Below, in pieces: positions 21,575-56,246 of a stretch of DNA of 64,000 nt; the first letter of the stretch is position 1; every line of letters starts with the position of its first letter. The position numbers were made by a program, and so were the translations under genes. This DNA is from Macrostomum lignano (taxonomy: Eukaryota). The notes below the pieces were generated by a model, which was not told where the DNA came from, did not search any database, and worked only from the letters and a program-made list of their open reading frames with translations. Location of the stretch: the NCBI GenBank assembly GCA_002269645.1, contig NIVC01000169.1, positions 711,308 to 775,307 of the forward strand. The letters are read 5' to 3'.

Positions 21575-22260
21575 ATAATCTGTGAGATTAGAGCCCTTCT
21601 CACTGATAATCTGTGAGATTAGAGCCATTCCCGTTGATAATCCATGAGATTAGAGCCATTCTCACTGATAATCAATGAGATTAGAGCCATTCTCACTGAT
21701 AATCTATGAGATTAGAGCCATTCTCACTGATAATCCATGAGATTAGAGCCATTCTCACTGATAATCCATGAGATTAGAGCCATTCTCACTGATAATCTAT
21801 AAGATTAGAGCCATTCTCACTGATAATCCATGAGATTAGAGCGAGCCATTCTCACTGATAATCCATGAGATTAGAGCCATTCTCACTGATAATCCATGAG
21901 ATTAGAGCCACTCCCGTTGATAATCTATAAGATTAGAGCCATTCTCACTGATAATCTATGAGATTAGAGCCATTCTCACTGATAATCTATAAGATTAGAG
22001 CCATTCTCACTGATAATCTATGAGATTAGAGCCATTCTCACTGATAATCCATGAGATTAGAGCCATTCTCACTGATAATCCATGAGATTAGAGCCATTCT
22101 CACTGATAATCTATAAGATTAGAGCCATTCTCACTGATAATCTATGAGATTAGAGCCATTCTCACTGATAATCCATGAGATTAGAGCCACTCCCGTTGAT
22201 AATCTATGACATCAGAGCCATTCTCACTGATAATCTGAGATAAGAGCCATTCTCACTATT
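21575..22260. repeat. 31-bp minisatellite between CMPK and CHORDC1
   Basis: Unit GAGATTAGAGCCATTCTCACTGATAATCCAT, about 21 copies. Confidence 0.95.
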
Positions 22261-22375
22261 CACTAATAATCTATGATATTCTCTCAGTTAAACAACAAGA
22301 CTAATCTTATAGCTAAGCTAAAAACCCGCTCCAAGCAATTCAGCTTCTCCTAAAATGTCAATTCCGTAAATAAAT

Positions 22376-23657: not shown

Positions 23658-26600
23658 GCTGATTGTCTGGCATTGACAACAACTTGATAGGAGTTGGAGA
23701 CTTCTATTGCAATGCTGATTAGCAGCATCAGTTAATGGAATAGAAAATTGAAAGAAATGGCAAATTAGAATTTTATAACATTTAAAAAAAACATAATTGA
23801 AAAAGCAACTTGACTATAAATTTGGTATAGCTGATTGACTTTTAGCATAACACTTTTAAATGGCAAAAAAATATTACACAACAAATTATATTATTAGCCT
23901 TGGTTATATACTTAACAAATACTTACAAATGATTGGTAAGATTTCACATTTGATTGGTTTCTTTCATAGGTAAATCAATTTTGGTCAAAAATTAAGTTGC
24001 ACGGCCAGTGTAAATCAGGGGGGGGGGGTTGCACATATTTGTTTCAACCTATAAAATAGCCTATAAACCAATAAACTCATCAACAATAAATGATAAGCTC
24101 AAGTCTATTGTGATACAATAATAATGTATTATTACAATCAGAATTTAGTCACTTAGTTTTTTCTTCAAAATTCTTATAAAAATACATTTTAAGTGGAAAA
24201 GTTAGTTTGACCTTTGCAAAAAAAGCATTTTTTTCAAATTTAAAATATCTTTTTATGTGTAGCATTTTTTAGCCATTATACATGCACAATTGTAGTAAAA
24301 TTTCTAATTGAATTGACAATAATATACAGTTTATAGAAATTGATTAAGCTATTTTTTCTGAAATTAGCCATAGATAAGTCCCCATTTGCAAATCCTACAT
24401 GTATGCTAGAAAATTCTAAGATACAGTGGACCTGAAAATATGCTTGGCATATATATCTATTATCTAGTATAGCATAATAGCTATACTATGGTAAATTTGC
24501 ATGCCACTGTGCCAATATATGGCATAGCCATAATGGCATGTTAAAAATAACTTTTTAAAGTATTTCTGGTAAAAAATATTAAAACAAAATAAAAAACAAG
24601 AAATGATATACAACAATTAATATTTATTCACTTAAAGATTTAAGAATGTGGAAATTAGTCCATAGAGAACATCAAACCATTGGCAAAATAGACTAATGGA
24701 CTACTTTGAATAGACCTATGTTTTTGCCTATTTTTAAGCCTTCAAAGGCTAGAAAAATAGGCAACCCTTGATTCTATATTGTCTATGGACTATCCCATAG
24801 CTAAGTCAAATAAGTCAAGAGAAAAGTCATGATTTTATTATTGAAGTTAATTAGTTAAAAATACCAAAAAATTAAGAAAGTTTGGCCTAATAAGATTTAC
24901 TATCTAAACATTATCTCTAAATTTATAATCAAAGAAATCATCTTATTTAGATATAAAACAATGTCAATAATAGAATTACTTAATAAATAGAATATCACTT
25001 AAGAGTAAACTATAAATAAGCCTTTACCCTTTTGATTGCAGTAATGCCTAGATTAAAAGAAATCCTTAAGGCCTAATATGTGCAAATCAGTAGTAGATCT
25101 AGGATTTTTAAATGAAAGGATAGATTGGTCTAAAAAAGCCTTATGCTTAAATTTAAATTGCAATATTCCCCCATTTATCATATGTAAGTTCAACTATGGC
25201 ATGGCAAAAAAGAGGGCAGCTGCCCTCCTAGACCTAGGCCTACTTCTCCCCCTCTGGATCTGCAACTAGAGTAAATAAAGAGATTAGAAAATAGTAGATA
25301 TACCTAAATATATCCTGGAATAATGTTATAACATAGGAATAAGACTTGCTTAGACCAATAATATATTTTTATCTATAATATAACTATAGCTTATAGTCTA
25401 TTACTAGTATTACTATTAGGCCTAAAATGGGAAGGCCAATAATGGTATCCTGGCCCTCCATATTTTAAATGTAAAATGTAAACTTTTTGCTTATTCTTGA
25501 CTTTTGCTACTTTGCATAAATGCATTTTGCTATAGGGTGACAAAACATAATGCCTCGCCTGCAATGCCAAAATGAATACATATACATGCAACACTAAAAT
25601 GCGTGCCTGCAATGCTAAAATGAGTGTCTATGGCACTACAATAAGTGCCTGTAATGTTAAAATGAAATGAATACCTACAACACTAAAATGAGTATCTTTG
25701 GTGCCAAAATGAATGCCTGTAGCACTTAATAAAATGAATGCTAATATGATGGATTCTGAAAATAATTGGCCATGTGTATTTTCCATATAAAAAATCTAAC
25801 TTGACGAGGGCATGCATCCTGTGTACCTTTCCCCCCCCCTAAATTTGCCATTGAACTTGGCCCCCCACTTTTTGAAACATTCCTACACCTATGCAAGCAT
25901 TACTAAGTTACATAATATAAAATAATAATTGCAATGCAAACAAATAAAGTGTTGACAGTCTTAAATCTGCTTTGTACTTTGTTACTGAAGTGGCTGTTCC
26001 CAAAATGGCTGTTGCCTGTAACCAAAGTGGATTGTATTCTTGTTTACTACATAATTGGTAGAATAGAAAGTTAGAAAAAATAATATCCCTACAAAAAAGC
26101 CCATGGTATTAGTAACAAATGCCAAATAGAAACAATAGGCCTAAGATTAAAAAAAGATTTCAGGGAGCCAAGAACAAAAACCCCTATATAATATAATCGG
26201 TTTTTTGTGCAATAAAGATGCTATAGCATCCTGACTCTCCTGAAATTTTTAGTAGGCCTTGGCCTAGCGCCTAGTCTGTCCATGGTCATGCCGCCATGGA
26301 CATGTCACATGGACAGGTCGTTTCATCTTTCTGATGAATAGGCCTATCCATCAAAGATCACATCCATGACTTTTGACATAAATTCATCTACCTTCTACCT
26401 ACTGTTTACAATGAAAATGTTTTTAAAGAACGGCCAGCAAACTAGAGCTGCTGATATTGGCAGATACTTTGCCTGATCTACTCTGTGCTGTGTTGCGAAT
26501 CGGCGTTATAGCAGCGTCAGTAATTTTTAATGTCGGTACCGTACCTACCGGTAGATCGGCATACTCGTGTATTTCAATTTAAATAGCCACGAACTTTCTA

Positions 26601-28620
26601 GAAACTTCTTTTCTTTCCGGGTTTTAGACGTAAACTGTTTTAAATATTTACAAATCTAAATTAAATCTATATATTAGGTTTTGATTTATCGACAATATCT
26701 CATTCTCAGATTTTACATGAACATGACCAATTATTATTCGGTTAAATTATTTTTAATCACCTTGCAGTCTGCAGTAATAGGCCCAGTTTAACTCCACGCC
26801 ATGGTGTTCGCATGTATTCTGATTCACAATCATTGATTAAGTATTTGATAAATTTATACAGTTGCTGATTTAGGCCGTGGACTAGGTCTGATTCATGACA
26901 GTTTTTATAAGTTTATTTTAGTTTTTTTCTATGGGTTATATACATTGTCATGTGCTACATACATGTACCTACATGTAGAAATCCTGTGCCCCCGTTTGAA
27001 ATTTTCTGGATCCGCGGCTGATTTTGTATAATAAAGAAATTTCATTTTGGGATGTTAAACTGATTCACTACTGACTGACGAAAGTGACGGTTCCAGGGGT
27101 GGGGCCTGCGGGGTGGCCACACGCCTCTCTCTCTGCCCCTCTGCATGGCTGGACTCTGGACTTGCAAAGGGCGAAATTTTGGGCCAACCAAAAAAGTTGG
27201 ACCAATTTGCCCCACCCTACTTTAAAAGCATCCTGGATCCGCCACTGTTCGCTTAATGGGAGTATATAATTTAATTTATGCTCAATACAAGTATTTTCGT
27301 CTTTTTTATAATCTGTTATATGTACATGTATTAATGTACTACGTACGTCGATCATGACGTACTTCGCTAAACGGTAAAGTGCTCTTGGGAAATAATTGCT
27401 TCAGATGTACGAGTATTTTAATGCCGTTTATTCAGTGCCGTACCCAAAGGGATACGGTGTCGGAACCTGGGAAGGGGGCCTGGGGGAGCCCCCACCTTTT
27501 AGCATAATCCTACATGTGTCATTTTTTAATTTAAAGTTAGTGTTAGGGTTTGTTGGGCCTTGGCTTTTCTGAGTCTTGGGCGCAGACCAATAGGTATAAC
27601 TTATTGGTTATACTTAAGTTATACTTATTGCATGGTCTGTGGTCTTGGGAGATAAGGGTAGAGCGAGAGGGCCGCACCGTTGCTATCCACACCTTAGAGA
27701 TCAATGCACATGTAAGAACTGCAAAGAATGTACAGTACGTGTCGCCTCTTGTACTTTGTCGTCTCTTTTGGCCACTTTCAAAACAGAATTGAATATAATT
27801 AGCCTGGTTGTAACAATGTCACAAACTGACATAACAGCGAGAGTAGGCCAGGGTGCCCTTAGATCGCAGCAATGTGGCCTCCCACCAATATATAGCCCCC
27901 CCCCACTTTGAAATATGTTCCGACACCGCTGCTAGCAACTATAAGCGCTTTATATTGGCGGCAAAATGCTGCCAAAATCTTGCCTGCCACCCTTACAGGA
28001 ATCCGACGTCGGTGAGACGTCCGCCGCCGTTTTAAACGTCTATCAACGTAGCTGGTAAATGTGTATACTTTCCCATTGTTTAGCAATTTGATGATCATTA
28101 TTCACATTTTTAATGCAGAACAATCCACTACTACAAACAATGCATTGTCTGTAGGATCGTCAAACAGAAAAACAATGCAAAGAATCAGCGGTCGCAGCAC
28201 GTGACAACGATTTGTCTATGGCTCGCGCCTACCGGCGCTCGCCAGACAATCGTTATCACGCACTGGGACCGCTGATTATTTATCCATTATACCGAGATGT
28301 TTGGTCAACGTTCCGCAGACAAAGCGCCCGAGAGAGATTGCCACCGCCTCAGCAGTCGCGGAAGAAATCGAAGCGAGATAAAAAAGATCAGAAAGCTAAG
28401 AAACGCCCCATAGATCTATGGTCTAACCACCACCCGATAGTTAAATTTTGTGTCAAAAAACCAGGCATGGCCATAGACTATCCTCCCTCCGACCCTCCCC
28501 CAATATCACCCCCTGCCCTGCGCACAATATCAAGCAAGCAAAGCTATCGAAATCTTCACTTAGTTAAGCTGCCCGTCAACAAGAGGTTTTGTTTTACACA
28601 GCGATTCTTCACTTTAGAAA

Positions 28621-31600
28621 ATGTCCTCTGTAAAACAGCAGACAGGAGCAACGGAGAACCTCGTTAGAGTTAGCGCTGAAATGCTAAGCACCGTTGCACC
28701 CTCCAGTCGAGAGCAGATGATAGAACACGGCACCCGATTTGTGCAGTTTGTTCACAGTAAAAATACCAAAGTTGATCTGCGTACAATCGACGAGAGAGCC
28801 GTCAACGAGTACCTGCGCTTCTTCTATTTCACGTTGCGAACGAAGCAAGATAAATTGTATTCCCCGTCGTCGCTAATCTGCATCCGGGCTGGGATTCAGC
28901 GCTATTTCGATGTGGTGCTGGGTCGACCGCTAATCCTGCCCGGAAATCCGGTGTTCATGACCTCCAACCGGATGTTGGGCCAGCGAGCTCGGGAATATGC
29001 TAGCTCCAGTGGCAGCTCCGTGCGACACTATGCGCCAATGCTGCACGCTGACCGTCAACTGCTTGAAGACTATTTCAATGGCAGCAGTGCCGGAGGTTAC
29101 TCGATGGAGGAGCGTCTACAAGATGGAGCGCTATTCGCGTTGTTCTACCATTTTGGCTGCACCCCATCGCAGCACCAGCAGAGGCATAACCAACAGGCCC
29201 AGCAAAAGCTAATAAGACGCGACCACCTAGTGTTCTCTATCGACGAAGAGGGTCGTGAATTCGCAACTCTGGAGCAGGATGAAGGCTTCTACACAGATTT
29301 AACACCTGGCGGAACCAGCAGGAATGCCTGTGGGTCGGTGCGAATGTACACGGGCTTAGAGCAGCTGAAGTCATACATCAACCTATTGCCGGAATTTACT
29401 AATGACAACTCGCTATTCCCTAAACCGGCGCGCAACGGTAGAGGCTATTCTACCAGTATTAATCGGGGTATTAATTATATGCAGAATTTTATGCGATACG
29501 TCAGCAAGAAAGCACGGCTTAGCAAGCTGTACTCGAACCACTGCATTCGGTGAGACTATATCCCTTGGCTTTGTCATTTCACATTACACACAGAAAATCG
29601 CATCGTAAAATCTTACATGTACTTTATTACTTTTAGAAGTAAGATACGTCTGTTTACTTTAAGAATTACATAGATGACAGATAAGTACATACAAGTAGTG
29701 CTTGTTCGAAAAACATCTTCTGCTCAAGCATGGTGGTACTGGGCTTCATTTCATAAAATCGCGACAAGTTATAAAAAATCTTTGGGATCAATTTCGTTCC
29801 AACAGGACTTAAGAGAGCCTTCGGGAGGTTGTAAAAGAGGGAGGAGGGGTTATCGATGTACAGGCTAGCTTGTCTCCGGAGGAGGTTGGCGCCTTGGCAG
29901 GGTGTGATACTAAAATTGAAGAAAGGAAAGGCCCAACCAACCCTTAAACTGCGATAGGGTCTGCAATGTACATTATCCTGTCCCTAGAAGGGGTTATAGC
30001 TAGGGCTCGGATGGCGAGGCAATAAAATCGATAATAAAGGCGGCTAGAGAGAGGGTTTTATTTTACTGTTATTTTTAATCAGACTAAGACACTTAAAGTA
30101 TACTAAACCAAAGCATTTAACCAGTCCTGGCTCCACAAGTGATAATTTAACTAATTTAAGGCCATAGACATTTTATTATTATTTTCCTATATACTAAAAA
30201 TGAGTTGTCTGTATGTATGTATGTATGTATGTATATGGGTATGCGATAGATTTCAGAAAAAACGGCTCAACCGATTTTCTTCAAACTTGCACCATTCGAT
30301 CAGAAATTTTTCTGGGACGGTACATGCATCTTAGCTAAGAAATTGCTAAATGTGAAAGGGATTAAATATTCATTATACCATGTGAATTTCAATTCTGATA
30401 AAGATTGCATCGCAACAAATTGAAAACAGTGTCGAAGAAATGCACACACGACTTGATTTAAATTGCGTAACCATATTGCTAACTTAAATTGAGACTGATA
30501 CTGGCTGACTGAGAAATTGATTATGTCATAACTTTTTACTCCAATTGACTTGCTGTAAGAATTGAATTATAAGGGCCACAATTCATGTGCTCCAATTGAA
30601 AAAAGATAGCCTAGATGCGAACAGACTGGACTGCTAATGTAGCGATCTGGGTTCGAATCTTAGTAGCGCAAATAGATTTTTTTATTAAAACAACTTAAAA
30701 ACAAAAAACTGCTAAACATAAAAGAAGCGCAATGTCAAACATAGAAGAGCCACCATGTCAAAAATAAAAGAGCCACCATATCGAACATAAAAGAGTTACC
30801 ATGTAAAACATTAAAGAGCCACCATGTAGAATATTAAAGAGCCACCATGTCAAACATAAAACAGCCACCATTTCGAAAATTAAAAAGCCATTATGTCAAA
30901 CATAAAAAAGCCACCATGTCAAACATAAAAGAGCCATCATGAAGAACATTAAAGAGCCACCATGTCGACCATTAAAAGAGCCACCATGTCGAACATTAAA
31001 AGAGCCACCATGTCGAACATACAAGAGCCACCATGTCAAACATAGAAGAGCCACCATGTCGACCATTAAAAGAGCCACCATGTCGAACATTAAAAGAGCC
31101 ACCATGTCAAACATAGAAGAGCCACCATGTCAAACATAGAAGAGCCACCATGTCAAACATAGAAGAGCCACCATGTCAAACATAGAAGAGCCACCATGTC
31201 AAACATAGAAGAGCCACCATGTCAAACATAGAAGAGCCACCATGTCAAACATTAAAGATATACAATTTCAAATGAAAAGGTATAAAGCGCCATGCCAATT
31301 TAAAGGAGCCACTATAAAGCTAAGGAAATTGTTGCACTTAGCTACTGGTACTTATTGTCTGGTGGATGCTTGCTATTTGGGGATGCTTGCTATCTGGGGG
31401 ATGCTTGCTATCTGGGGGATGCTTGCTATCTGGGGAATGAATGGGAATGCGCCCAGTAAAGTAGTATTTTTGTCGCCAGGCTAGAGAACTATAAATGTAG
31501 ACTGCGAGAAAAGATCGTACATTATAAAATCTCCCCGTGCACAATCATATATACTAAAAATGAGTTGTCTGTGCGTATGCGATAGATTTCAGAAAAATTG

Positions 31601-34600
31601 GCTCAACCGATTTTCTTCAAACTTGCACCATCTAAATATACTAAATCTCTAAGGTTTGTATGCTTGAATCCCATATACTAAAAATGAGTTGTCTGTATGT
31701 GGGTAGGTATGCGATAGATTTTAGAAAAAACGGCTCAACCGATTTTCTTCAAACTTGCACCATTCTCATGCACCATATCTGAGCTCATGTAGTTCAGATA
31801 TTGAAATAGTACACACAAGTGATGCTGATTTCTGCTAATAGGAAATACCAGCGCATTTATTAAAGGTTTCATTCTTTGATCTAGGCTAATTAAAAGAGAG
31901 GGTCTAAGGCCGTCAATGATTTGCATATTTGCTGCGGATAAGAATATGCCCCGGCCAGCGACGATATGCACTAAGAGTTTGTGCTTGAAAGGATCAGCAC
32001 TATTTGCTGATTGAGAAAGGGTTTTGGGCTGATGAAGGAAACTTTTTTGGCTGATGAAAGTTCTGATTCATGGCAATTTATTTTTGCCAAAATGAGAAAA
32101 AATAATTTTTGAATAATGGAAATCAACATTTTGGATAATTATAGTAAGGTTACTCTTGTGTCAAAATAAAAACCAACTGGTGTCATTTTCAAGGCTCCCC
32201 AGAGGGGGGCTAAATGGCTAGTCTAAATATACTAAATCTCTAAGGTTTGTATGCTTGAATCCTATATACTAAAAATGTGATGTCTATATATATGTTCGAT
32301 CAGAAAATTTCCCGTGACTGTACATGCGTCGTGGCTAAGAAATTGTTCCATGCTAAAGGCATTAAATATTCGAAAAACATGCTTTTTTGCAAAGGTCAAG
32401 CAGCTCTTTCGACTTGAAATGCATTGTAAGAATGCTAGAGAAAAAACTGACTGGTTGAATTCTGATTCTGAAATAGATTGCATCATAACTGAATTGTAAC
32501 TCCGACTTGAATTGAAAATGCAGTGTGGAAGCGTAGCACCAGACTTGATTTAAATTGCGTAACCATATTGTTAACTGATACTGACTGACTGAGAAACTGA
32601 TTATGTCATAACTGCTTCGTGTGATTTACTCTATGCTTGGATTTTAAAGTGTTGAATTATATAAGTGCAAAATTTGATGTTATCAAAACGATGAGAGCTA
32701 GCCTAGAGGTGAACAAACTGAACTGCTAAATGCAGCGACGATGGTTCGAATTTTCATAGAGTATAATTTTTTTAATTTAAGCTTTTCAACGTCAGGAAAA
32801 CTAAAAGACTTTTTAAAAAGAATCGTCATGTAAAAATCGTAGAAGCGTCGTGTAAACAATCAGAGAAGCGTCATGTAAAAATCGTAGAAGCGTCATGTAA
32901 ACAATCATAGAAGCGTCATGTAAAGAATCGTAGAAGCGTCATGTAAACAATCATAGAAGCGTCATGTAAAAAATCATAGAAGCGTCATGTAAAGAATCGT
33001 AGAAGCGTCATGTAAACAATCATAGAAGCGTCATTTAAAAAATCATAGAAGCGTCATTTAAAAAATCATAGAAGCGTCACGTAAACAATCATAGAAGCGA
33101 CATGTAAAAAATCGTAGAAGCGTCATGTAAAAAATCATAGAAGCGTCATGTAAAAAATCATAGAAGCGTCATGTAAACAATCATAGAAGCGTCATGTAAA
33201 AATCATAGAAGCGCCATGTAAAAAATCATAGAAGCGTCATGTAAAAAATCATAGAAGCGTCATGTAAACAATCATAGAAGCGTCATGTAAAAAATCATAG
33301 AAGCCTCATTTAAAAATCATAGAAGCGTCATGTAAGCAATCATAGAAGCGTCATGTAAAAATCATAAAAGCGTCATGTAAACAATCATAGAAGCGTCATG
33401 TAAAAATCGTAGCAGCGTCATGAAAAAATCATAGAAGCGTCATGTAAGCAATCATAGAAGCGTCATGTAAACAATCATAGAAGCGTCATGTAAACAATCA
33501 AAGAAGCGTCATGTAAAAAATCATAGAAGCGTCATGTAAACAATCATAGAAGCGTCATGTAAACAATCATAGAAGCGCCATGTAAAAAATCATAGAAGCG
33601 TCATTTTTTAAAAAATCATAGAAGCGTCATGTAAACAATCATAGAAGCGTCATGTAAAAAATCATAGAAGCGTCATGTAAAAAATCATAGAAGCGTCATG
33701 TAAAAGTCATAGAAGCGTCATGAAAAAATCATAGAAGCCTCATTTAAAAAGTAATGAAAGTGTCATTTAAAATATTAAGAAGCATCATGGTAGAATAAAA
33801 GAAGCGTCATGTCAGACATGAAGGGTGTGATGTAAAAATTAAATGAAGCTATAATGCTGTGCTGGGGAGAATTACTGAGACGTCAAGGCTCTCAGAGAAT
33901 AACTGAGATTACGGGGGGGGGTTTCTGAGATGTCAAAGCAAAAGTCAGAGGCTACTTCAAAGTTCATGTACTTTACTCAATTTTTTATTGCATTCTTTGT
34001 TGGACTTTGTTGGCTCGCCACGGGGGGGCGCAGGTATAAAAAGCGTAATGTAAAAAATAAAAGAAGCTTCATGTCGAAGTTAAGAGATTCATTTAGGAAT
34101 CCCTACGATGTCGAGGCTTGCAGGGAATCGCTATAATGCTGTAGTAGTGCTATAATGACTCTCAGAGAGAATTACTGAAATTTCAATGCTTTAGGGTTAG
34201 GTTAGGGTTAGGGTTAGGGTAGGGTTAGGGTTAGGCTAGGGTTAGGGTTAGAAGGTTGACAGATATTTTTAGATTTTCAAGGCTTATTGGGGGCATTGCT
34301 GAGATGTCAAGGGGGGAAGTTGATGTGTTAAAGCTTGTGGGGGGAATTATTGACATGTCAAGGCTTACAAGGTTTGACAGGAGATTTTTTAAGATTTCAA
34401 GGATATATGTAGCTTATTAAAAAACGTGTATTGCATTTCTTTGGCTCCCCAACGGGGGGCGTAGATTGCTAGTCCCATATACTAAAAATGAGTTGTCTGT
34501 ATGTGGGTAGGTATGCGATAGATTTTAGAAAAAACGGCTCAACCGATTTTCTTCAAACTTGCACCATTTGATCAGAAATTTTCCTGGGACGGTACATGCA

Positions 34601-37600
34601 TCTTGGCTAAGAAGTTGCTCAATATTAAAGGGATTAAATATTCGAAAAACATGCTTTTTTGCAAAGGTCAAGCAGCTCTTTCGACCTGAAATGCATTGTA
34701 AGAATGCTAGAGAAAAAACTGACTGACTGAATTCCAATTGTGATAAGGATTACATCACAACCAGTGCCGAAGAAATGCACACAAGACTTGATTAAAATTG
34801 CGTAACCATATTGCTAACTTAAATTGAGACTGATACTGGCTGACTGAGAAATTGATTATGTCATAACTTTTTACTCTTACCGATTTGCTATAAGAATTTA
34901 ATTATAAGTGCCACAATTCATGTTCTCCAATTGACAAGAGATAGCATAGATGCGAACAGACTGGACTGCTGATGCAGCGACCTGGGTTCGAATCTTAGTA
35001 GTGCAAAAAGATTTTTTTATTCAAAAACCTTAAAAACACAAAATGCTAAACACAAAAATGCACAATGTCAAACATTAAAGAGCCACCATGTCGAACATTA
35101 AAAGAGCCACCATGTCAAACATAGAAGAGCCACCATGTCAAACATAGAAGAGCCACCATGTCAAACATAGAAGAGCCACCATGTCAAACATAGAAGAGCC
35201 ACCATGTCAAACATAGAAGAGCCACCATGTCAAACATAGAAGAGCCACCATGTCAAACATTAAAGATATACAATTTCAAATGAAAAGGTATAAAGCGCCA
35301 TGCCAATTTAAAGGAGCCACTATAAAGCTAAGGAAATTGTTGCACTTAGCTACTGGTACTTATTGTCTGGTGGATGCTTGCTATTTGGGGATGCTTGCTA
35401 TCTGGGGGATGCTTGCTATCTGGGGGATGCTTGCTATCTGGGGAATGAATGGGAATGCGCCCAGTAAAGTAGTATTTTTGTCGCCAGGCTAGAGAACTAT
35501 AAATGTAGACTGCGAGAAAAGATCGTACATTATAAAATCTCCCCGTGCACAATCATATATACTAAAAATGAGTTGTCTGTGCGTATGCGATAGATTTCAG
35601 AAAAATTGGCTCAACCGATTTTCTTCAAACTTGCACCATCTAAATATACTAAATCTCTAAGGTTTGTATGCTTGAATCCCATATACTAAAAATGAGTTGT
35701 CTGTATGTGGGTAGGTATGCGATAGATTTTAGAAAAAACGGCTCAACCGATTTTCTTCAAACTTGCACCATTCTCATGCACCATATCTGAGCTCATGTAG
35801 TTCAGATATTGAAATAGTACACACAAGTGATGCTGATTTCTGCTAATAGGAAATACCAGCGCATTTATTAAAGGTTTCATTCTTTGATCTAGGCTAATTA
35901 AAAGAGAGGGTCTAAGGCCGTCAATGATTTGCATATTTGCTGCGGATAAGAATATGCCCGGCCAGCGACGATATGCACTAAGAGTTTGTGCTTGAAAGGA
36001 TCAGCACTATTTGCTGATTGAGAAAGGGTTTTGGGCTGATGAAGGAAACTTTTTTGGCTGATGAAAGTTCTGATTCATGGCAATTTATTTTTGCCAAAAT
36101 GAGAAAAAATAATTTTTGAATAATGGAAATCAACATTTTGGATAATTATAGTAAGGTTACTCTTGTGTCAAAATAAAAACCAACTGGTGTCATTTTCAAG
36201 GCTCCCCAGAGGGGGGCTAAATGGCTAGTCTAAATATACTAAATCTCTAAGGTTTGTATGCTTGAATCCTATATACTAAAAATGTGATGTCTATATATAT
36301 GTTCGATCAGAAAATTTCCCGTGACCGTGACTGTACATGCGTCGTGGCTAAGAAATTGTTCCATGCTAAAGGCATTAAATATTCGAAAAACATGCTTTTT
36401 TGCAAAGGTCAAGCAGCTCTTTCGACTTGAAATGCATTGTAAGAATGCTAGAGAAAAAACTGACTGGTTGAATTCTGATTCTGAAATAGATTGCATCATA
36501 ACTGAATTGTAACTCCGACTTGAATTGAAAATGCAGTGTGGAAGCGTAGCACCAGACTTGATTTAAATTGCGTAACCATATTGTTAACTGATACTGACTG
36601 ACTGAGAAACTGATTATGTCATAACTGCTTCGTGTGATTTACTCTATGCTTGGATTTTAAAGTGTTGAATTATATAAGTGCAAAATTTGATGTTATCAAA
36701 ACGATGAGAGCTAGCCTAGAGGTGAACAAACTGAACTGCTAAATGCAGCGACGATGGTTCGAATTTTCATAGAGTATAATTTTTTTAATTTAAGCTTTTC
36801 AACGTCAGGAAAACTAAAAGACTTTTTAAAAAGAATCGTCATGTAAAAATCGTAGAAGCGTCGTGTAAACAATCAGAGAAGCGTCATGTAAAAATCGTAG
36901 AAGCGTCATGTAAACAATCATAGAAGCGTCATGTAAAGAATCGTAGAAGCGTCATGTAAACAATCATAGAAGCGTCATGTAAAAAATCATAGAAGCGTCA
37001 TGTAAAGAATCGTAGAAGCGTCATGTAAACAATCATAGAAGCGTCATTTAAAAAATCATAGAAGCGTCATTTAAAAAATCATAGAAGCGTCACGTAAACA
37101 ATCATAGAAGCGACATGTAAAAAATCGTAGAAGCGTCATGTAAAAAATCATAGAAGCGTCATGTAAAAAATCATAGAAGCGTCATGTAAACAATCATAGA
37201 AGCGTCATGTAAAAATCATAGAAGCGCCATGTAAAAAATCATAGAAGCGTCATGTAAAAAATCATAGAAGCGTCATGTAAACAATCATAGAAGCGTCATG
37301 TAAAAAATCATAGAAGCCTCATTTAAAAATCATAGAAGCGTCATGTAAGCAATCATAGAAGCGTCATGTAAAAATCATAAAAGCGTCATGTAAACAATCA
37401 TAGAAGCGTCATGTAAAAATCGTAGCAGCGTCATGAAAAAATCATAGAAGCGTCATGTAAGCAATCATAGAAGCGTCATGTAAACAATCATAGAAGCGTC
37501 ATGTAAACAATCAAAGAAGCGTCATGTAAAAAATCATAGAAGCGTCATGTAAACAATCATAGAAGCGTCATGTAAACAATCATAGAAGCGCCATGTAAAA

Positions 37601-40600
37601 AATCATAGAAGCGTCATTTTTTAAAAAATCATAGAAGCGTCATGTAAACAATCATAGAAGCGTCATGTAAAAAATCATAGAAGCGTCATGTAAAAAATCA
37701 TAGAAGCGTCATGTAAAAGTCATAGAAGCGTCATGAAAAAATCATAGAAGCCTCATTTAAAAAGTAATGAAAGTGTCATTTAAAATATTAAGAAGCATCA
37801 TGGTAGAATAAAAGAAGCGTCATGTCAGACATGAAGGGTGTGATGTAAAAATTAAATGAAGCTATAATGCTGTGCTGGGGAGAATTACTGAGACGTCAAG
37901 GCTCTCAGAGAATAACTGAGATTACGGGGGGGGGGGTTTCTGAGATGTCAAAGCAAAAGTCAGAGGCTACTTCAAAGTTCATGTACTTTACTCAATTTTT
38001 TATTGCATTCTTTGTTGGCTCGCCACGGGGGGGGGGCGCAGGTATAAAAAGCGTAATGTAAAAAATAAAAGAAGCTTCATGTCGAAGTTAAGAGATTCAT
38101 TTAGGAATCCCTACGATGTCGAGGCTTGCAGGGAATCGCTATAATGCTGTAGTAGTGCTATAATGACTCTCAGAGAGAATTACTGAAATTTCAATGCTTT
38201 AGGGTTAGGTTAGGGTTAGGGTTAGGGTAGGGTTAGGGTTAGGCTAGGGTTAGGGTTAGAAGGTTGACAGATATTTTTAGATTTTCAAGGCTTATTGGGG
38301 GCATTGCTGAGATGTCAAGGGGGGAAGTTGATGTGTTAAAGCTTGTGGGGGGGAATTATTGACATGTCAAGGCTTACAAGGTTTGACAGGAGATTTTTTA
38401 AGATTTCAAGGATATATGTAGCTTATTAAAAAACGTGTATTGCATTTCTTTGGCTCCCCAACGGGGGGCGTAGATTGCTAGTCCTATATACTAAAAATGT
38501 GATGTCTATATATGTGATAGATTAGAGAAAAAATGGCTGGACCGATTTTGTTCGAACTTGCACTGTTCGATCAGAAATTTTCCCGTGACTGTACATGCAT
38601 CGTGGTTAAGAAATTGCTCGATGCCAAAGGCATTAAATATTCGAAAAACATGCTTTTTTGCAAAGGTCAAGCAGCTCTTTCGACTTGAAATGCATTGTAA
38701 GAATGCTAGAGAAAAAACTGACTGGTTGAATTCTGACTCTGAAATAGATTGCATCATAACTGAATTGTAACTCCGACTTGAATTGAAAATGCAGTGTGGA
38801 AGCGTAGCACCAGACTTGATTTAAATTGCGTAACCATATTGTTAACTGATACTGACTGACTGAGAAACTGATAAATGATAAATGATAAATGATAAATGAT
38901 AAAAGCGTCATTTAAAAATCATAGAAGCGTCATATAAAAATCGTAGAAGCGTCATGTAAACAATCATAGAAGCGTCATTTAAAAAATCATACAAGCGTCA
39001 TGTAAACAATCATAGAAGCGTCATGTAAAAAATCGTAGAAGCGTCATGTAAACAATCATAGAAGCGTCATGTAAACAATCATAGAAGCGTCATGTAAACA
39101 ATCATAGAAGCGCCATGTAAAAAATCATAGAAGTGTAATGTAAAAAATCATAGAAGCGTCATGTAAACAATCATAGAAGCGTCATGTAAAAAATCATAGA
39201 AGCGCCATGTAAAAAATCATAGAAGCGTCATGTAAAAAATCATAGAAGCGTCATGTAAAAATCATAAAAGCGTCATGTAAACAATCATAGAAGCGTCATG
39301 TAAAAATCGTAGCAGCGTCATGAAAAAATCATAGAAGCGTCATGTAAGCAATCATAGAAGCGTCATGTAAACAATCATAGAAGCGTCATGTAAACAATCA
39401 TAGAAGCGTCATGTAAAAAATCATAGAAGCGTCATGTAAACAATCATAGAAGCGTCATGTAAAAATCATAGAAGCGCCATGTAAAAAATCATAGAAGCGT
39501 CATGTAAAAAATCATAGAAGCGTCATGTAAACAATCAAAGAAGCATCATGTAAAAAATCATCGAAGCCTCATTTAAAAAATCATAGAAGCGTCATTTAAA
39601 AAATCATAGAAGCGTCATGTAAAAATCATAAAAGCGTCATGTAAACAATCATAGAAGCGTCATGTAAAAATCATAGAAGCGTCATTTTTTAAAAAATCAT
39701 AGAAGCGTCATGTAAACGATCATAGAAGCGTCTTGTAAACAATCAGAGAAGCGCCATGTAAAAAATCATAGAAGCGTCATTTAAAAAATCATAGAAGCGT
39801 CATGTAAACAATCATAGAAGCGTCATGTAAAAAATCATAGAAGCGCCATGTAAAAAATCATAGAAGCGTCATTTTTAAAAAAATCATAGAAGCGTCATGT
39901 AAAAATCATAAAAGCGTCATGTAAACAATCATAGAAGCGTCATGTAAAAATCGTAGCAGCGTCATGAAAAAATCATAGAAGCGTCATGTAAGCAATCATA
40001 GAAGCGTCATGTAAACAATCATAGAAGCGTCATGTAAACAATCATAGAAGCGTCATGTAAAAAATCATAGAAGCGTCATGTAAACAATCATAGAAGCGTC
40101 ATGTAAACAATCATAGAAGCGCCATGTAAAAAATCGTAGAAGCGTTATATAAAAATCATAGAAGCGTCATTTTTTAAAAAATCATAGAAGCGTCATGTAA
40201 ACAATCATAGAAGCGTCATGTAAAAAATCATAGAAGCGTCATGTAAAAAATCATAGAAGCGTCATGTAAAAAATCATAGAAGCGTCATGTAAAAAGTCAT
40301 AGAAGCGTCATGTAAAAGTCATAGAAGCGTCATGAAAAAATCATAGAAGCCTCATTTAAAAAGTAATGAAAGTGTCATTTAAAATATTAAGAAGCATCAT
40401 GGTAGAATAAAAGAAGCGTCATGTCAGACATGAAGGGTGTGATGTAAAAATTAAATGAAGCTATAATGCTGTGCTGGGGAGAATTACTGAGACGTCAAGG
40501 CTCTCAGAGAATAACTGAGATTACGGGGGGGGGGTTTCTGAGATGTCAAAGCAAAAGTCAGAGGCTACTTCAAAGTTCATGTACTTTACTCAATTTTTTA

Positions 40601-43600
40601 TTGCATTCTTTGTTGGACTTTGTTGGCTCGCCACGGGGGGCGCAGGTATAAAAAGCGTAATGTAAAAAATAAAAGAAGCTTCATGTCGAAGTTAAGAGAT
40701 TCATTTAGGAATCCCTACGATGTCGAGGCTTGCAGGGAATCGCTATAATGCTGTAGTAGTGCTATAATGACTCTCAGAGAGAATTACTGAAATTTCAATG
40801 CTTTAGGGTTAGGTTAGGGTTAGGGTTAGGGTAGGGTTAGGGTTAGGCTAGGGTTAGGGTTAGAAGGTTGACAGATATTTTTAGATTTTCAAGGCTTATT
40901 GGGGGCATTGCTGAGATGTCAAGGGGGAAGTTGATGTGTTAAAGCTTGTGGGGGGGAATTATTGACATGTCAAGGCTTACAAGGTTTGACAGGAGATTTT
41001 TTAAGATTTCAAGGATATATGTAGCTTATTAAAAAACGTGTATTGCATTTCTTTGGCTCCCCAACGGGGGGCGTAGATTGCTAGTCCCATATACTAAAAA
41101 TGAGTTGTCTGTATGTGGGTAGGTATGCGATAGATTTTAGAAAAAACGGCTCAACCGATTTTCTTCAAACTTGCACCATTTGATCAGAAATTTTCCTGGG
41201 ACGGTACATGCATCTTGGCTAAGAAGTTGCTCAATATTAAAGGGATTAAATATTCGAAAAACATGCTTTTTTGCAAAGGTCAAGCAGCTCTTTCGACCTG
41301 AAATGCATTGTAAGAATGCTAGAGAAAAAACTGACTGACTGAATTCCAATTGTGATAAGGATTACATCACAACCAGTGCCGAAGAAATGCACACAAGACT
41401 TGATTAAAATTGCGTAACCATATTGCTAACTTAAATTGAGACTGATACTGGCTGACTGAGAAATTGATTATGTCATAACTTTTTACTCTTACCGATTTGC
41501 TATAAGAATTTAATTATAAGTGCCACAATTCATGTTCTCCAATTGACAAGAGATAGCATAGATGCGAACAGACTGGACTGCTGATGCAGCGACCTGGGTT
41601 CGAATCTTAGTAGTGCAAAAAGATTTTTTTATTCAAAAACCTTAAAAACACAAAATGCTAAACACAAAAATGCACAATGTCAAACATTAAAGAGCCACCA
41701 TGTCGAACATTAAAGAGCCACCATGTCGAACATTAAAGAGCCACAATGTCGAACATTAAAAGAGCCACCATGTCGAACATTAAAAGAGCCACCATGTCGA
41801 ACATACAAGAGCCACCATGTCAAACATTAAAGAGCCACCATGAAGAACATTAAAGAGCCACAATGTCGAACATTAAAAAGCCACCCCGTCAAACATAAAA
41901 GAGCCACCATGTCAAGCATAAAAGAGCCACCATGTCGAACATAAAAGAACCACCATGTCAAACATAAAAGAGCCACCATGTCAAATATGAAAAAGCCACC
42001 ATGTCGAACATTAAAGAGCCACCATGTCAAACATTTATGAGCCACAATGTCAAACATTAAAGAGCCACCATGTCAAATATTAAAGAGCCACCATTTCAAA
42101 CATTAAAGAGCCATCATTACAGACATTAAGGTGCCCCAGGTCAAACATAAAAGGACCAACATGTCAAACATTAAAGAGCCACCATGTCAAGCATAAAAGG
42201 ACCACCATGTCGAACATTAAAGAGCCACCATGTCAAAAATTAAAGAGCCACCATGTCTAACATTATAGAGCCACCATGTCGAACATTAAAGAGCCACCAC
42301 GTCAAACATCAAAGGGCCACCATGTCAAACATAAAAGAGCCACCATGTTAAACATAAAAGAGCCATCATGTCAAACATAAAAGAGCCACCATGTCAAACA
42401 TAAAAGGACCACCATGTCAAACATTAAAGAGGCACCATGTCGAACATTAAAAAGCCACCATGTCGAACATTAAAGAGCCACCATGTCAAAAATTAAACAG
42501 CCACCGTGTTTAACATTAAAGAGCCACCATGTCGAACATTAAAGAGGCACCATGTCGAAAATTAAAAAGCCACCATGTCAAACATTATAGAGCCACCATG
42601 TCGAACATTAAAGAGCCACCATGTCAAACATAAAAGAGCCATCATGTCAAACATTAAAGAGCCACCATGTCAAACATAAAAGAGCCAACATGTCAAACAT
42701 TAAAGAGCCACAATGTGAAACATTAAAGAGTCACCATGTCAAGTATATTCGTGACTCCATGTCAAACATCAGAGAGCCATCATGCCAAACATTAAAGAGC
42801 CACCATGTTGAAAATAAAAAGCCACCATTTAGAACATTAAAGAGCCACCATGTAGAACATAAAAGAGCCACCATGTCAAACATTAAAGAGCCACCATGTC
42901 AAACATTAAAGAGCCACCATGTAGAACATAAAAGAGCCACCATGTCAAACATTAAAGAGCCACCATGTCAAACATTAAAGAGCCACCATGTAGAACATAA
43001 AAGAGCCACCATGTCAAACATAAAAGAGCCACGATGTCAAACATAAAAGAGCCACGATGTCAAACATAAAAGATACACAATTTCAAACGTAAAAGTAAGC
43101 GTCATGCCAATTTTAAAGGAGTCACTATAGAGCTAAGGAAATTGTTGCACTAGCTACTTATTGTCTGGTGGATGCTTACTATTTGGGGATGCTTGCTATC
43201 TGGGGGATGCTTGCTATCCGGGAGGGGGGATGCTTCCTATCTGGTGGATGCTAGCTATCTGGGGGACGCTTGCTATTTGGGGGATGCTTGCTATCCGGGG
43301 GATGCTTGCAATCTGGGGGATGCTTGCTGTCTTGGGATGATTTCTTTTTGCATTACACTTTATTTGAGCAGTTTGTCTGCTGTCTTTGTGAAGGCTTTAT
43401 TTGGCTGTCTTTTTGTTACTTGTAGAGAACAGAGATTCTATCCAGATGTCCCCCAACGGGGGGCGAAGATTGCTAGTATTATTACTAATTTTTACACAGG
43501 GATCAGTGGCGTACGCAGGACTTTCCATTGGGAGGGGGCCGCGCGGCCCCCTGCCCCCCTGCGTACGCCACTGTAGAGGATCGGTGTAACCTAAGTTCTA

Positions 43601-44394
43601 TAAAATAAATAATTGATCTTGTAGTGTGCGTGCGTACGCACCGTTATTGTGGGCCAGTGCACACATGATTAGGGCTGTCTGATTAGTTACGGAGTGGGGG
43701 TGGGTGTCGCCAACCCCATTTAACCAAGTCAAGTCATAATAATATAAAGTCTGATGAGATGAGATGGATGAGTACGCGCCCTGAGAGGCGTTGAGTACCA
43801 GTTTCGCTGCACGCCAAAATATTGCCTGTTTTAGTTGTAGCAAATCCTATACTATCCTGTCAATTATGGTAGTTAGACCCATCCGCTGTAACATTAATGA
43901 CAAGACTATCCACCAGATCCGAATGTTACACACGTGTCACTAGGGCTCACAAATTCCCGGGATCCCAGGGGTTAATCCCGGGATATCACTGAAAAAGCGT
44001 CGAGTCCCAGTATGTCACTCTTCATCCGACAGCTCATTCGATTCAAATGGTACCTTTGATTTGCTATTATTGGAAAATGAAATACTTTCATAGAAAAATG
44101 GTGGCAAACAACAAAAATCCTCCTTAACTCCGAACTCAATTTGACAGACTGACTCGAATTCGCGACCTCAGCCAGAGCGGCTTAAGCGCCAACGAGATTC
44201 GCTTGGTCACCGGTCTGAAGTGTAGCAAGAGTGTTAGACGCTGTCTGAAATGGAGCTCCGCCGATGCTGCCGTGACTGCCGCATCTCCCTCCTCCGCTGC
44301 TAACGCCGTCGAGGACATCCCAGTTGACGATTTTGGCGAGGAATTTCAAGCGGGAATTGGAATGGAATTTCAAACTGACTTTGAGATGGAGTGA
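28621..44394 (+). CDS. DUF3504 / CryptonA-derived tyrosine-recombinase-fold protein (KIAA1958/KCTD1/ZMYM-type domain), 2 coding exons across a 14.6-kb intron
   Basis: Exon 28621-29549 ends NHCI-CG|GTGAGA. Exon 44148-44394 starts TTGACAG|A CTG ACT, giving NHCIRLTRIRDLSQSGLSANEIRLVTGLKCSKSVRRC. The N-part LRTKQDKLYSPSSLICIRAGIQRYF matches the family signature. The 5' end is uncertain. Confidence 0.8.
30745..31255. repeat. Helitron-internal satellite A (22-23 bp); also at ~35065-35265 and ~41680-43070
   Basis: Unit AGAAGAGCCACCATGTCAAACAT. Confidence 0.93.
32820..33760. repeat. Helitron-internal satellite B (23 bp); also at ~36835-37760 and ~38900-40340
   Basis: Unit AGAAGCGTCATGTAAAAAATCAT. 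Confidence 0.93.
34191..34251 (+). repeat. Interstitial degenerate (TTAGGG)n tract; copies at 38199-38259 and 40803-40863
   Basis: About 10 telomeric-type hexamers with the same variant pattern in all three copies. Confidence 0.9.
43504..43573. mobile_element. 70-bp MITE-like element
   Basis: Perfect 15-bp terminal inverted repeats CAGTGGCGTACGCAG / CTGCGTACGCCACTG. No clear TSD. Confidence 0.6.

Positions 44395-49121: not shown

Positions 49122-54854
<5,733 letters not shown>

Positions 54855-56211: not shown

Positions 56212-56246
<35 letters not shown>

What the first reader, a model, noticed from the sequence alone, without database searches (positions are those of the whole stretch)
28621..44394. 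Domesticated, catalytically dead Crypton tyrosine-recombinase gene completed across a 14.6-kb transposon-filled intron
Seen: the 310-aa ORF stops at NHCIR only because a phase-2 donor splits the Arg codon. A matching acceptor at 44147 restores the recombinase box-II tail in frame. Only HxxR survives: the box-I Arg region reads HFGCTP, the GH position reads GL, and the nucleophile Tyr position reads C (SVRRC). An acidic C-terminal tail follows. Known: CryptonA YR domains were domesticated as DUF3504 in KCTD1, KIAA1958, ZMYM2-4 and QRICH1. Inference: an apparently stand-alone, possibly lineage-specific domestication acting as a DNA-binding or chromatin regulator, which ORF-based annotation would miss.
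Basis: partly seen in the sequence, partly recalled or inferred. Interest (0 to 1): 0.75.

Follow-up and report, generated by a model that had tools for sequence, protein, structure and literature searches.

The report
Dead Crypton recombinase gene in flatworm
A flatworm (Macrostomum lignano) gene, already annotated only as "hypothetical protein", encodes a transposon-derived tyrosine recombinase that keeps its fold but has lost its catalytic residues, probably another case of a Crypton recombinase reused by its host.

Summary
Exon 1 (28621-29549) and exon 2 (44148-44394) join through a phase-2 GT..AG intron of 14,598 nt to give a 391-aa protein. This protein is identical to GenBank BOX15_Mlig029737g1 of Macrostomum lignano, a model built from RNA-seq, so the gene is not missed by annotation.

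The protein has the two-domain tyrosine-recombinase fold; the best structural matches are Cre, XerA and QRICH1. Its relatives are Crypton-type elements, and 106 of the 157 closest keep the full R-K-H-R-H-Y set. The window protein reads T-D-H-R-L-C.

The intron position is ancestral to this subfamily and is only about 98 nt in one relative. Here a 13.3-kb block of Helitron-like, minisatellite-rich non-coding repeats has inflated it. That block is absent from the second genomic copy (g3).

Neutral decay cannot explain losing four catalytic residues while the reading frame stays open (joint probability at most 2.5e-4), so some constraint is likely. Domestication is still unproven: no orthologues or dN/dS were available, g3 carries a frameshift, and intact relatives exist in the same genome.

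Verdict: a new member of a known kind, of moderate interest.

The parts
28605..28620 (+). Pyrimidine-rich AG acceptor (ttcttcactttag|aaa) 3 nt before the start codon. The in-frame TAG stop is part of it. Candidate spliced-leader trans-splice or 5'-UTR acceptor.
   Evidence: Read directly from the sequence. Function not tested.
28621..29549 (+). Coding exon 1 (929 nt, residues 1-309 plus two bases of Arg310). It encodes the core-binding domain and most of the catalytic-domain fold. It includes the degenerate box I (HFGCTPSQ, T181 at 29161-29163), a Gln-rich insert (184-196) and HCIR (29539-29549).
   Evidence: tblastn with relatives hits 28585-29550 with E down to 1.7e-48.
29550..44147 (+). Phase-2 GT..AG intron of 14,598 nt.
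   Evidence: The position is conserved in relative L002, where the intron is about 98 nt. ORFs of P0068 and P0188 also stop at NHC[IV]R.
29550..30184 (+). Unique 5' part of the intron, shared with the second genomic copy (g3).
   Evidence: 98.8% identity between window 27188-30184 and L003 8562-11562.
30185..43476 (+). 13,292-nt insertion block of head-to-tail non-coding repeats. Ends are 5' TCCYATATACTAAAAATG... and 3' ...CCCCAACGGGGGGCGWAGATTGCTAG. It carries two 23-nt minisatellites, an 18-nt array and a TTAGGG-like 17-mer. A unit of about 4.0 kb is duplicated at 95-98% identity.
   Evidence: The block is absent from g3; the empty site is ...TTATTATTATT|TATTATTACTAA. Repeats. Terminal motifs. 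No ORF of 100 aa or more apart from repeat artefacts.
43477..44147 (+). Unique 3' part of the intron, ending in the acceptor tttgacag.
44148..44394 (+). Coding exon 2 (third base of Arg310, residues 311-391, stop at 44392-44394). It holds the box II tail with L333 (44215-44217, the family's His) and C342 (44242-44244, the family's nucleophile Tyr), then the disordered acidic tail 349-391 (44263-44391).
   Evidence: pLDDT is below 50 for residues 349-391.

Best explanation
This is a real two-exon gene of Macrostomum lignano (Mlig029737.g1). It derives from a Crypton-type DNA transposon whose only protein is a tyrosine recombinase.

Shown: the protein keeps the basic two-domain recombinase fold, with a core-binding domain and a catalytic-domain fold (pI 9.65). 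It has lost the first catalytic Arg, the Lys, the second His and the nucleophilic Tyr. From the roles these residues have in tyrosine recombinases, it cannot cut or rejoin DNA. It has also lost the family's N-terminal motif and ends in a disordered acidic tail.

Inferred: it is retained under constraint as a non-catalytic DNA-binding or protein-docking factor. That is how the known Crypton-derived DUF3504 proteins (QRICH1 in Zincore, ZMYM2-4, KCTD1) are thought to act.

The intron was inherited from the transposon lineage, where it is about 100 nt. It was later inflated to 14.6 kb by a 13.3-kb insertion of Helitron-like, minisatellite-bearing non-autonomous repeats.
For: - Gene model: the spliced protein is 100% identical over 391 aa to GenBank BOX15_Mlig029737g1, and the gene span is the same 15,774 nt. 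That annotation comes from StringTie/TACO assembly of RNA-seq and excludes transcripts overlapping annotated repeats (PMC5730564).
- Exon 2 is the only window fragment that matches the family's post-HxxR segment.
- The intron position is conserved in relatives.
- Fold: the AF2 model has pLDDT 71.5. The 35 best PDB matches are all tyrosine recombinases (Cre E = 1.6e-7) or QRICH1.
- Family: there are 12,003 representatives at E <= 1e-3. Relatives pass the Pfam DUF3504 threshold. A marine relative is a 1,889-bp unit with identical copies in different flanks, so it is mobile and encodes only the recombinase.
- Catalytic residues: the window protein reads T-D-H-R-L-C against RKHRHY in 106 of the 157 nearest relatives.
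- Losses concentrate in active-site motifs: 8 of 10 conserved active-site columns are lost against 5 of 28 other conserved columns (p = 9e-4).
- Neutral-decay simulation: the joint probability of at least 4 of 6 catalytic changes with no stop codon is at most 2.5e-4, indels ignored.
- Copy comparison: exon 1 has 2 substitutions in 929 nt against 19 in 2,068 nt of flanks between the two genomic copies (p = 0.033).
- The two copies lie in duplicated syntenic segments, not at scattered sites.
Against: - No read-level evidence of the junction was seen here. The protein is absent from the Logan assemblies in the collection.
- No orthologue is closer than 38% identity, so there is no dN/dS and no test of age.
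- The second copy (g3) has a 1-nt deletion in a GGG run that truncates it to 196 aa. This is either an assembly error or real pseudogenisation.
- The lineage evolves about 1.5 times faster than its nearest relative.
- The genome was not searched as a whole, so unannotated copies cannot be excluded.
- DNA binding and any regulatory role are inferred only from fold, charge and analogy.
Confidence: 0.55

Rival explanations
1. Transcribed transposon fossil. On this reading it is an old, immobile Crypton copy with no host function. Its reading frame is open by luck, or because it was inactivated recently, and RNA-seq-based annotation picked it up.
For: - Intact relatives exist in the same genome.
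- The second copy is frameshifted.
- The lineage shows an accelerated rate.
- The intron tolerates 13 kb of repeats, and in g3 an LTR retrotransposon.
- No orthologue was found.
Against: - Losing 4 of 6 catalytic residues while keeping 391 codons open is very unlikely under neutrality, at most 2.5e-4 without counting indels.
- Losses are concentrated in the active site, while the structural core is kept.
- Exon 1 is about four times less diverged than its flanks.
- The model survived the annotators' repeat filter.
Confidence: 0.27
2. Transposon-control factor. On this reading the dead recombinase is kept because it interferes with the active Cryptons of the same genome. It would occupy their recombination sites or poison their synaptic tetramers, much as truncated transposases repress their parent elements.
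For: - Catalytically intact-looking relatives (signature RKHRQY) coexist in M. lignano.
- The fold, the basic surface and both domains needed for DNA clamping and multimer contacts are retained.
Against: - It shares only 32-36% identity with those relatives. Shared DNA-site or subunit recognition is therefore doubtful.
- The family's N- and C-terminal motifs are lost.
- There are no data on Crypton activity in this species.
Confidence: 0.13
3. Annotation or assembly artefact. On this reading the two exons are not joined in vivo, for example because a transcript assembly was merged across a repetitive gap, and only the 310-aa ORF exists.
For: - The annotators' pipeline can merge transcripts across repetitive regions up to 10 kb.
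- The intron is about ten times the species average of 1.1-1.4 kb.
- No independent spliced sequence was found.
Against: - The canonical GT..AG sites are in the right phase.
- Exon 2 continues the domain exactly where exon 1 stops: relative P0003 aligns to residue 366 on both sides.
- Exon 2 is the unique profile hit in the window.
- The intron position is identical in relatives.
Confidence: 0.04

Closest known systems
Crypton-derived DUF3504 host genes (KCTD1b, KIAA1958, ZMYM2/3/4, QRICH1, WOC; Kojima & Jurka 2011, PMC3212892)
   Same: Both are a Crypton tyrosine-recombinase fold kept as an expressed gene with the catalytic set destroyed and the Tyr lost. There is a fold-level match to QRICH1 in the Zincore complex (9hjt_H, E = 8.5e-5) and a weak hit to Pfam's QRICH1 N-terminal domain.
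   Different: - The vertebrate genes lost the second Arg, and most lost the first His. Here HxxR is kept and the first Arg, Lys, second His and Tyr are lost.
- Those proteins are long and multidomain. This one is a stand-alone 391-aa protein.
- It does not reach Pfam DUF3504 at E <= 1.
- No conservation across species has been demonstrated.
Active Crypton-type elements (CryptonA-like): marine metagenome element P0006, and M. lignano Mlig009749 (P0187) and P0042/P0186
   Same: They share 30-38% identity over about 80% of the length. They have the same two-domain layout and conserved core motifs (YLRFFY, SPSSLICIRA, NHCIR). The flatworm subclade shares the RI.DL motif and, in several members, the same intron.
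   Different: Those relatives keep R-K-H-R-H/Q-Y, an N-terminal LINWxNLP motif and a C-terminal hydrophobic motif. One is demonstrably multicopy. The window gene has none of these features and is known only from two syntenic copies.
Cre / XerA / IntI tyrosine recombinases
   Same: The overall fold matches (TM normalised to target 0.52-0.57 for Cre). The family's HxxR, GH and Y motifs align to XerA.
   Different: Sequence identity is 12-14%. There is no nucleophile and no first Arg, so the chemistry is impossible.
Intronised, truncated 'Glomhopper' CryptonA copies of Glomeromycota (PMC13465315)
   Same: Both are DUF3504/Crypton-lineage loci in which intron-containing variants coexist with intronless, catalytically intact ones.
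   Different: They belong to a different kingdom. Those loci number in the hundreds to thousands and sit in repeat compartments. This gene is low-copy.
Non-autonomous Helitrons in head-to-tail arrays (for the intron block only)
   Same: The block has a 5' TC end, a 3' CTAG end and a short GC hairpin (CCCC-AAC-GGGG) 13 nt before the 3' end. It has no target-site duplication and shows tandem head-to-tail junctions with more 5' ends than 3' ends.
   Different: There is no Rep/helicase ORF. The outer insertion site reads T|T rather than A|T. The hairpin is short. Dispersal elsewhere in the genome could not be checked.

Membership tests
Tyrosine recombinase superfamily | Two-domain fold: N-terminal core-binding domain plus C-terminal catalytic domain | tested here: met
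   The AF2 model was searched against the PDB. The top 35 hits are all tyrosine recombinases or QRICH1, aligned over about 340 columns, with Cre at E = 1.6e-7.
Tyrosine recombinase superfamily | Catalytic residues R-K-H-R-H/W-Y | tested here: not met
   The window protein reads T181, D226 (or R234), H307, R310, L333, C342. In the 157 nearest relatives, 106 read RKHRHY.
Tyrosine recombinase superfamily | Match to Pfam Phage_integrase (PF00589) | tested here: not met
   There is no hit at E <= 1 for the window protein. Eight of 10 relatives hit at E <= 0.1, most below the curated cut-off.
Crypton DNA transposon | Element whose only protein is a tyrosine recombinase, present in multiple copies at different sites | tested here: inconclusive
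   The feature is met for a relative: a 1,889-bp identical core in at least 4 left and 5 right flank contexts. For the window gene, only two copies in duplicated syntenic segments are known. The whole genome could not be searched.
CryptonA / DUF3504 lineage | Match to Pfam DUF3504 (PF12012) at the gathering score | tested here: not met
   The window protein gives no hit. Relatives P0011, P0190 and P0191 score 37.2, 30.9 and 47.8 bits against a cut-off of 29.7, so the link is transitive only.
CryptonA / DUF3504 lineage | Phylogenetic placement among Repbase CryptonA recombinases and DUF3504 genes | not testable with these tools
   No Repbase Crypton sequences or named DUF3504 proteins could be brought in.
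Domesticated (exapted) transposon gene | Expressed and correctly spliced | tested here: inconclusive
   The identical public model was derived from RNA-seq. No reads were inspected here, and there is no Logan transcript.
Domesticated (exapted) transposon gene | Open frame and core kept beyond neutral expectation | tested here: met
   In the simulation the joint probability is at most 2.5e-4. Losses are enriched in the active site (p = 9e-4). Exon against flank divergence gives p = 0.033.
Domesticated (exapted) transposon gene | Syntenic orthologues in other species under purifying selection | not testable with these tools
   No other Macrostomum genome is available. The best non-self hit is 36-38% identical.
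ZMYM / WOC / KIAA1958 / QRICH1 / KCTD1 orthologue | Accessory domains (MYM zinc fingers, BTB, CARD) or upstream exons | tested here: not met
   Pfam finds none. There is no family or other coding signal upstream. The annotated product is 391 aa.
Helitron (intron block) | 5' TC, 3' CTRR, subterminal 3' hairpin, no target-site duplication | tested here: met
Helitron (intron block) | Insertion between A and T; Rep/helicase gene or a known autonomous partner; dispersed copies | tested here: inconclusive
   The outer site reads T|T, while internal 5' ends follow an A. There is no ORF. The motifs are absent from the other M. lignano loci held, about 34 kb in all.

The most novel reading that the evidence does not exclude
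A macrostomid-specific, independent exaptation of a Crypton recombinase into a stand-alone pseudo-recombinase. The protein would be a basic DNA clamp with its active site removed, fused to a short acidic and aromatic tail. It would act as a transcription-factor-like regulator or as a repressor of the Cryptons still present in the genome. This would be a young and experimentally tractable counterpart of the ancient DUF3504 domestications, because M. lignano has RNAi and transgenesis.
Probability: 0.4. Interest if true: 0.55.

Novelty: new member of a known kind. Interest (0 to 1): 0.36.

Why it matters
Crypton-derived DUF3504 proteins (QRICH1, ZMYM2-4, KCTD1) matter in human development and disease. 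All known domestications are ancient, so the steps from recombinase to regulator cannot be observed.

This flatworm gene sits next to still-intact relatives in the same genome. It shows a different pattern of residue loss, keeping HxxR and losing the first Arg, Lys, second His and Tyr. The host is a model organism with RNAi and transgenesis. If it proves to be under selection, it would be a young case for studying how a recombinase turns into a non-catalytic factor.

In practical terms, it gives a fold and an origin to a GenBank 'hypothetical protein' that Pfam does not recognise.

Tried and rejected
- Pfam and PDB sequence searches with the protein alone gave nothing usable: a QRICH1 domain hit at E = 0.013 and no PDB hit.
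- The word-indexed protein search with a profile added only two proteins. The exhaustive HMM search was needed to reach the M. lignano relatives.
- I looked for exon 2 of the second copy (g3). It is not in the 20.6 kb held, where the intron runs into an LTR retrotransposon.
- I looked for upstream exons carrying the family's N-terminal motif or for other Crypton copies in the window. There are none.
- I tried to identify the organism behind the closest intron-sharing relative (SRR28338156) through the literature. Nothing was found.
- No paper links Crypton with Macrostomum.
- There are no tRNA genes or Rfam families in the window.
- The intron-repeat terminal motifs were searched in the other loci held and are absent.
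- A first large MAFFT alignment timed out and was replaced by hmmalign.
- I rejected the idea that the gene is a ZMYM/KIAA1958-type orthologue, because it has no accessory domains.
- I rejected the idea that the intron holds an autonomous transposon, because it has no ORFs.
Full report
**Origin of the window**

That gene lies on contig NIVC01000169.1 of assembly GCA_002269645.1. It spans 15,774 nt, exactly 28621-44394 of the window.

The neighbours upstream are a CHORD-domain gene and an adenylate-kinase gene, both on the minus strand.

The annotation of this assembly was made from a genome-guided transcript assembly: STAR, StringTie and TACO on RNA-seq plus a de novo transcriptome. The GenBank subset excludes non-coding transcripts and transcripts that overlap annotated repeats (PMC5730564). 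The gene model is therefore already public, and by the way it was made it rests on transcript data. I did not see reads myself. The protein is not present in any Logan assembly in the collection.

**Check of the observation**

- The ORF 28621-29553 ends ...NHCIR followed by TGA.
- The stop is created by the donor cattCG|gtgaga.
- The acceptor tttgacag|A is at 44147/44148.
- Joining 28621-29549 to 44148-44394 restores CGA = Arg310 and gives an open frame of 391 codons.

To test whether exon 2 could be a chance find, I built a 42-column profile of the segment that follows NHCIR. It used nine relatives and excluded the window protein and its closest relative. I scored it against all 1,767 stop-to-stop fragments of the six frames of the window. 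The only hit is 44128-44391 (E = 9.6e-5); the next best has E = 3.7.

In tblastn, relative P0003 aligns up to its residue 366 at the end of exon 1 and from residue 366 at the start of exon 2.

The closest intron-bearing relative, P0002, comes from a 1,963-nt Logan contig. It has a GT..AG intron in the same phase in the same Arg codon, but of only about 98 nt.

**What the protein is**

Pfam does not recognise the protein. It gives only a sub-threshold hit to the QRICH1 N-terminal domain (E = 0.013) and no DUF3504 or Phage_integrase hit.

Its homologues are proteins of about 450 aa from marine metagenomes and sequencing-run assemblies, with 25-38% identity over about 80% of the length. Of these, 9 of 10 hit the QRICH1 domain, 8 of 10 hit Phage_integrase and 6 of 10 hit DUF3504. 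Three further relatives pass the curated DUF3504 cut-off. An exhaustive profile search finds 12,003 cluster representatives at E <= 1e-3 and 1,044 at E <= 1e-30.

One relative, P0006, occurs on seven Tara and other marine contigs. They share a 100% identical 1,889-bp core that contains only the recombinase ORF. The core is joined to at least four different left flanks and five different right flanks in mixed combinations. That pattern is the signature of a recently active multicopy element whose only protein is a tyrosine recombinase, which is a Crypton in the sense of Kojima & Jurka (PMC3212892).

An AlphaFold2 model built with 11 sequences has mean pLDDT 71.5. Its low-confidence segments are 1-16, 182-196, 221-238 and 349-391. 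Its 35 best PDB matches are Cre, Tre, XerA, IntI, Tn1549 integrase, XerH, a staphylococcal integrase, and QRICH1 in the Zincore complex (9hjt_H, E = 8.5e-5).

**Catalytic residues**

Alignment to relatives and of the family profile to XerA fixes the positions. Among the 157 nearest representatives the six-residue signature is RKHRHY in 106. Most of the rest are fragments. The window protein reads T-D-H-R-L-C, which is unique in the set.

In detail:
- Box I is HFGCTPSQ, followed by a Gln-rich insert, where relatives have HFGLRGRE.
- The hairpin Lys is D226. Under an alternative alignment of a low-confidence loop it is R234. There is no Lys anywhere in the hairpin region.
- H307 and R310 are kept.
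- GH has become GL (L333).
- The nucleophilic Tyr is C342.

By the established roles of these residues in tyrosine recombinases, the protein cannot cleave or rejoin DNA.

The folded part (residues 20-348) is strongly basic (pI 9.65, 45 K+R against 30 D+E). The last 43 residues have 11 acidic and no basic residues. The family's N-terminal motif (LINWxNLP...) and its C-terminal hydrophobic motif are both missing.

**Relatives in the same genome**

The exhaustive search led to several M. lignano proteins:
- A cluster of UniRef 'Tyr recombinase domain-containing protein' entries (P0042 and P0186, eight sequences).
- A 'PIPK domain-containing' fusion model (P0143).
- GenBank BOX15_Mlig009749g2 (P0187, 449 aa), which is intronless in the genome.

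P0042, P0186 and P0187 read R-K-H-R-Q-Y; P0143 reads R-K-H-R-Q-S. Together with the window protein they share the motif RI.DL after HxxR. They are 32-36% identical to the window protein and 46-53% identical to P0002.

The window gene is thus the divergent, inactivated member of a flatworm Crypton subclade. It has about 42 lineage-specific changes against 28 in P0002.

**The intron**

The intron has no ORF of 100 aa or more apart from repeat artefacts. It consists of three parts:
- 635 nt of unique sequence.
- A 13,292-nt block (30185-43476).
- 671 nt of unique sequence.

The block holds two kinds of 23-nt minisatellite, an 18-nt array and a TTAGGG-like 17-mer. It also holds a unit of about 4.0 kb repeated in tandem: 31052-34734 matches 35061-38733 at 98.3%, and 32819-35264 matches 39425-41877 at 95%.

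Its units begin TCCYATATACTAAAAATG and end CCCCAACGGGGGGCGWAGATTGCTAG. They are joined head to tail (CTAG|TCC). There are ten 5' motifs and four 3' motifs. All are on the plus strand and all lie inside the block.

A 5' TC, a 3' CTAG and a subterminal GC hairpin are the terminal signature of Helitrons (my own knowledge). The absence of a Rep/helicase gene makes them non-autonomous at best. The outer insertion site reads T|T. I could not test dispersal in the genome.

The block is an insertion. In the second genomic copy the flanks are directly joined (...TTATTATTATT|TATTATTACTAA...). So 'transposon-filled' is right in spirit for non-coding repeats. The intron itself is ancestral, not a by-product of domestication.

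**The second copy (g3)**

BOX15_Mlig029737g3 (P0012, 196 aa) lies on contig NIVC01003538.1. The segment is syntenic with window 21.5-30.2 kb, at 92-95% identity upstream and 98.8% over 27188-30184. This fits the known duplicated karyotype of the sequenced line.

Within the 98.8% stretch, exon 1 has two substitutions in 929 nt: M21I and one synonymous change. The flanks have 19 in 2,068 nt (Fisher p = 0.033).

g3 also lacks one G of a GGG run (window 28991), which shifts the frame. This may be a homopolymer error of a PacBio-based assembly or a real disabling mutation. Its intron carries a Ty3/gypsy-like LTR retrotransposon with open gag and pol ORFs. Its exon 2 lies beyond the DNA I could fetch.

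**Is it domesticated?**

Evidence for constraint comes from two tests.

First, I looked at the 41 alignment columns that are at least 85% conserved in the family. The protein keeps 25 of them. Of the 16 lost, eight lie in the catalytic motifs, three are shared with the subclade and the rest are conservative changes. The contrast is 8 of 10 active-site columns lost against 5 of 28 others (p = 9e-4).

Second, I let the coding sequence of the intact relative Mlig009749 decay by neutral substitutions. The joint probability of changing at least four of the six catalytic residues without creating a stop codon was 2.5e-4 at 5% divergence and 0 in 4,000 trials at 10% or more. Indels were not counted.

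The loss of catalysis with preservation of the frame and core is therefore not neutral decay. Something has selected for the protein.

Whether that selection acts for the host (domestication) or within the transposon family (for example as a regulator) cannot be told here. Orthologues, dN/dS, genome-wide copy number and expression pattern are all missing. I put the host-gene, non-catalytic-factor reading at about 0.55. The transcribed-fossil reading is about 0.27, a Crypton-repressor role about 0.13, and an annotation artefact about 0.04.

**Likely mode of action (inferred)**

The protein would be a basic two-domain clamp that can still embrace DNA or dock partner proteins but cannot cut. It is followed by a flexible acidic tail. 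This is what is proposed for DUF3504 domains (PMC3212892). It also fits QRICH1, which together with SEPHS1 forms a coregulator complex of zinc-finger transcription factors (Zincore; cited in PMC13538652; the solved structure 9hjt, 'binding to ZFP91 on DNA', is among my fold hits).

**Comparison with the known, and novelty**

The gene works like, and descends from the same kind of element as, the DUF3504 genes. It is not an orthologue of any of them, because it has no accessory domains and no upstream exons. It also fails the Pfam DUF3504 model itself.

Its pattern of residue loss differs from the vertebrate genes. Those lost the Tyr and the second Arg, and mostly the His.

Lineage-specific candidates of this kind were already anticipated, for example in tunicates. 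Intronised and intact Crypton copies coexisting in one genome have been described in fungi.

I therefore class it as a new member of a known kind. Its interest is moderate, mainly because the host is an experimentally tractable model and the event may be young.

Noticed in passing
window 56021-56923 (-): A 300-aa single ORF with a NeuroD/atonal-type basic helix-loop-helix motif ([24 protein letters not shown]...[15 protein letters not shown]) and a poly-Gln stretch. It is probably a proneural bHLH gene.
   Followed up: no
window 51929-52636 (+): An ORF with leucine-rich repeats ([24 protein letters not shown]). It is probably an exon of an LRR protein.
   Followed up: no
window 21.5-22.2 kb, 45.9-48.5 kb, 49.2-50.2 kb, 53.5-54.5 kb, 59.6-60.3 kb: There are long micro- and minisatellite arrays: a 31-nt unit, 20-nt and 15-nt-type units, and 4-nt-unit arrays that read as (CLSV)n/(RQTD)n in translation. 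They produce many spurious long ORFs.
   Followed up: partly
window 21545-30184 vs L003 331-11562: Identity between the two duplicated segments is 92-95% upstream, including the adenylate-kinase gene region, but 98.8% over the 3 kb around exon 1. This could be local gene conversion or constraint. It is unexplained.
   Followed up: partly
L003 11586-20591 (-): A Ty3/gypsy-like LTR retrotransposon sits in the intron of the g3 copy. Its ORFs are open: gag 326 aa, protease-RT 425 aa and RT-RNaseH-integrase 852 aa. Its far end lies outside the locus.
   Followed up: partly
L014 6001-7350: BOX15_Mlig009749g2 is an intronless 449-aa Crypton-type recombinase of M. lignano. It has the signature R-K-H-R-Q-Y and both terminal family motifs, so it is a candidate active Crypton or a second host gene.
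   Followed up: partly
L011 286-1686 (+) and 2276-3595 (-): A 3.7-kb marine metagenome contig carries two Crypton-type recombinase genes facing each other (466 aa and 439 aa, the latter with DUF3504 and the QRICH1 domain).
   Followed up: no
window 28605-28623: The sequence ttcttcactttag|AAAATG places an AG acceptor 3 nt before the start codon. The upstream in-frame stop is part of it. This would suit spliced-leader trans-splicing, which is common in this species.
   Followed up: no
window 34191-34251, 38199-38259, 40803-40863: A telomere-like 17-mer (TTAGGGTTAGGCTAGGG, 3.6 copies) lies inside each ~4-kb repeat unit of the intron.
   Followed up: no
protein P0143 (UniRef A0A1I8H8Y0, M. lignano): A 617-aa 'PIPK domain-containing' model includes a Crypton-type recombinase part (signature RKHRQS). 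It is probably a fused gene model from the older assembly.
   Followed up: no
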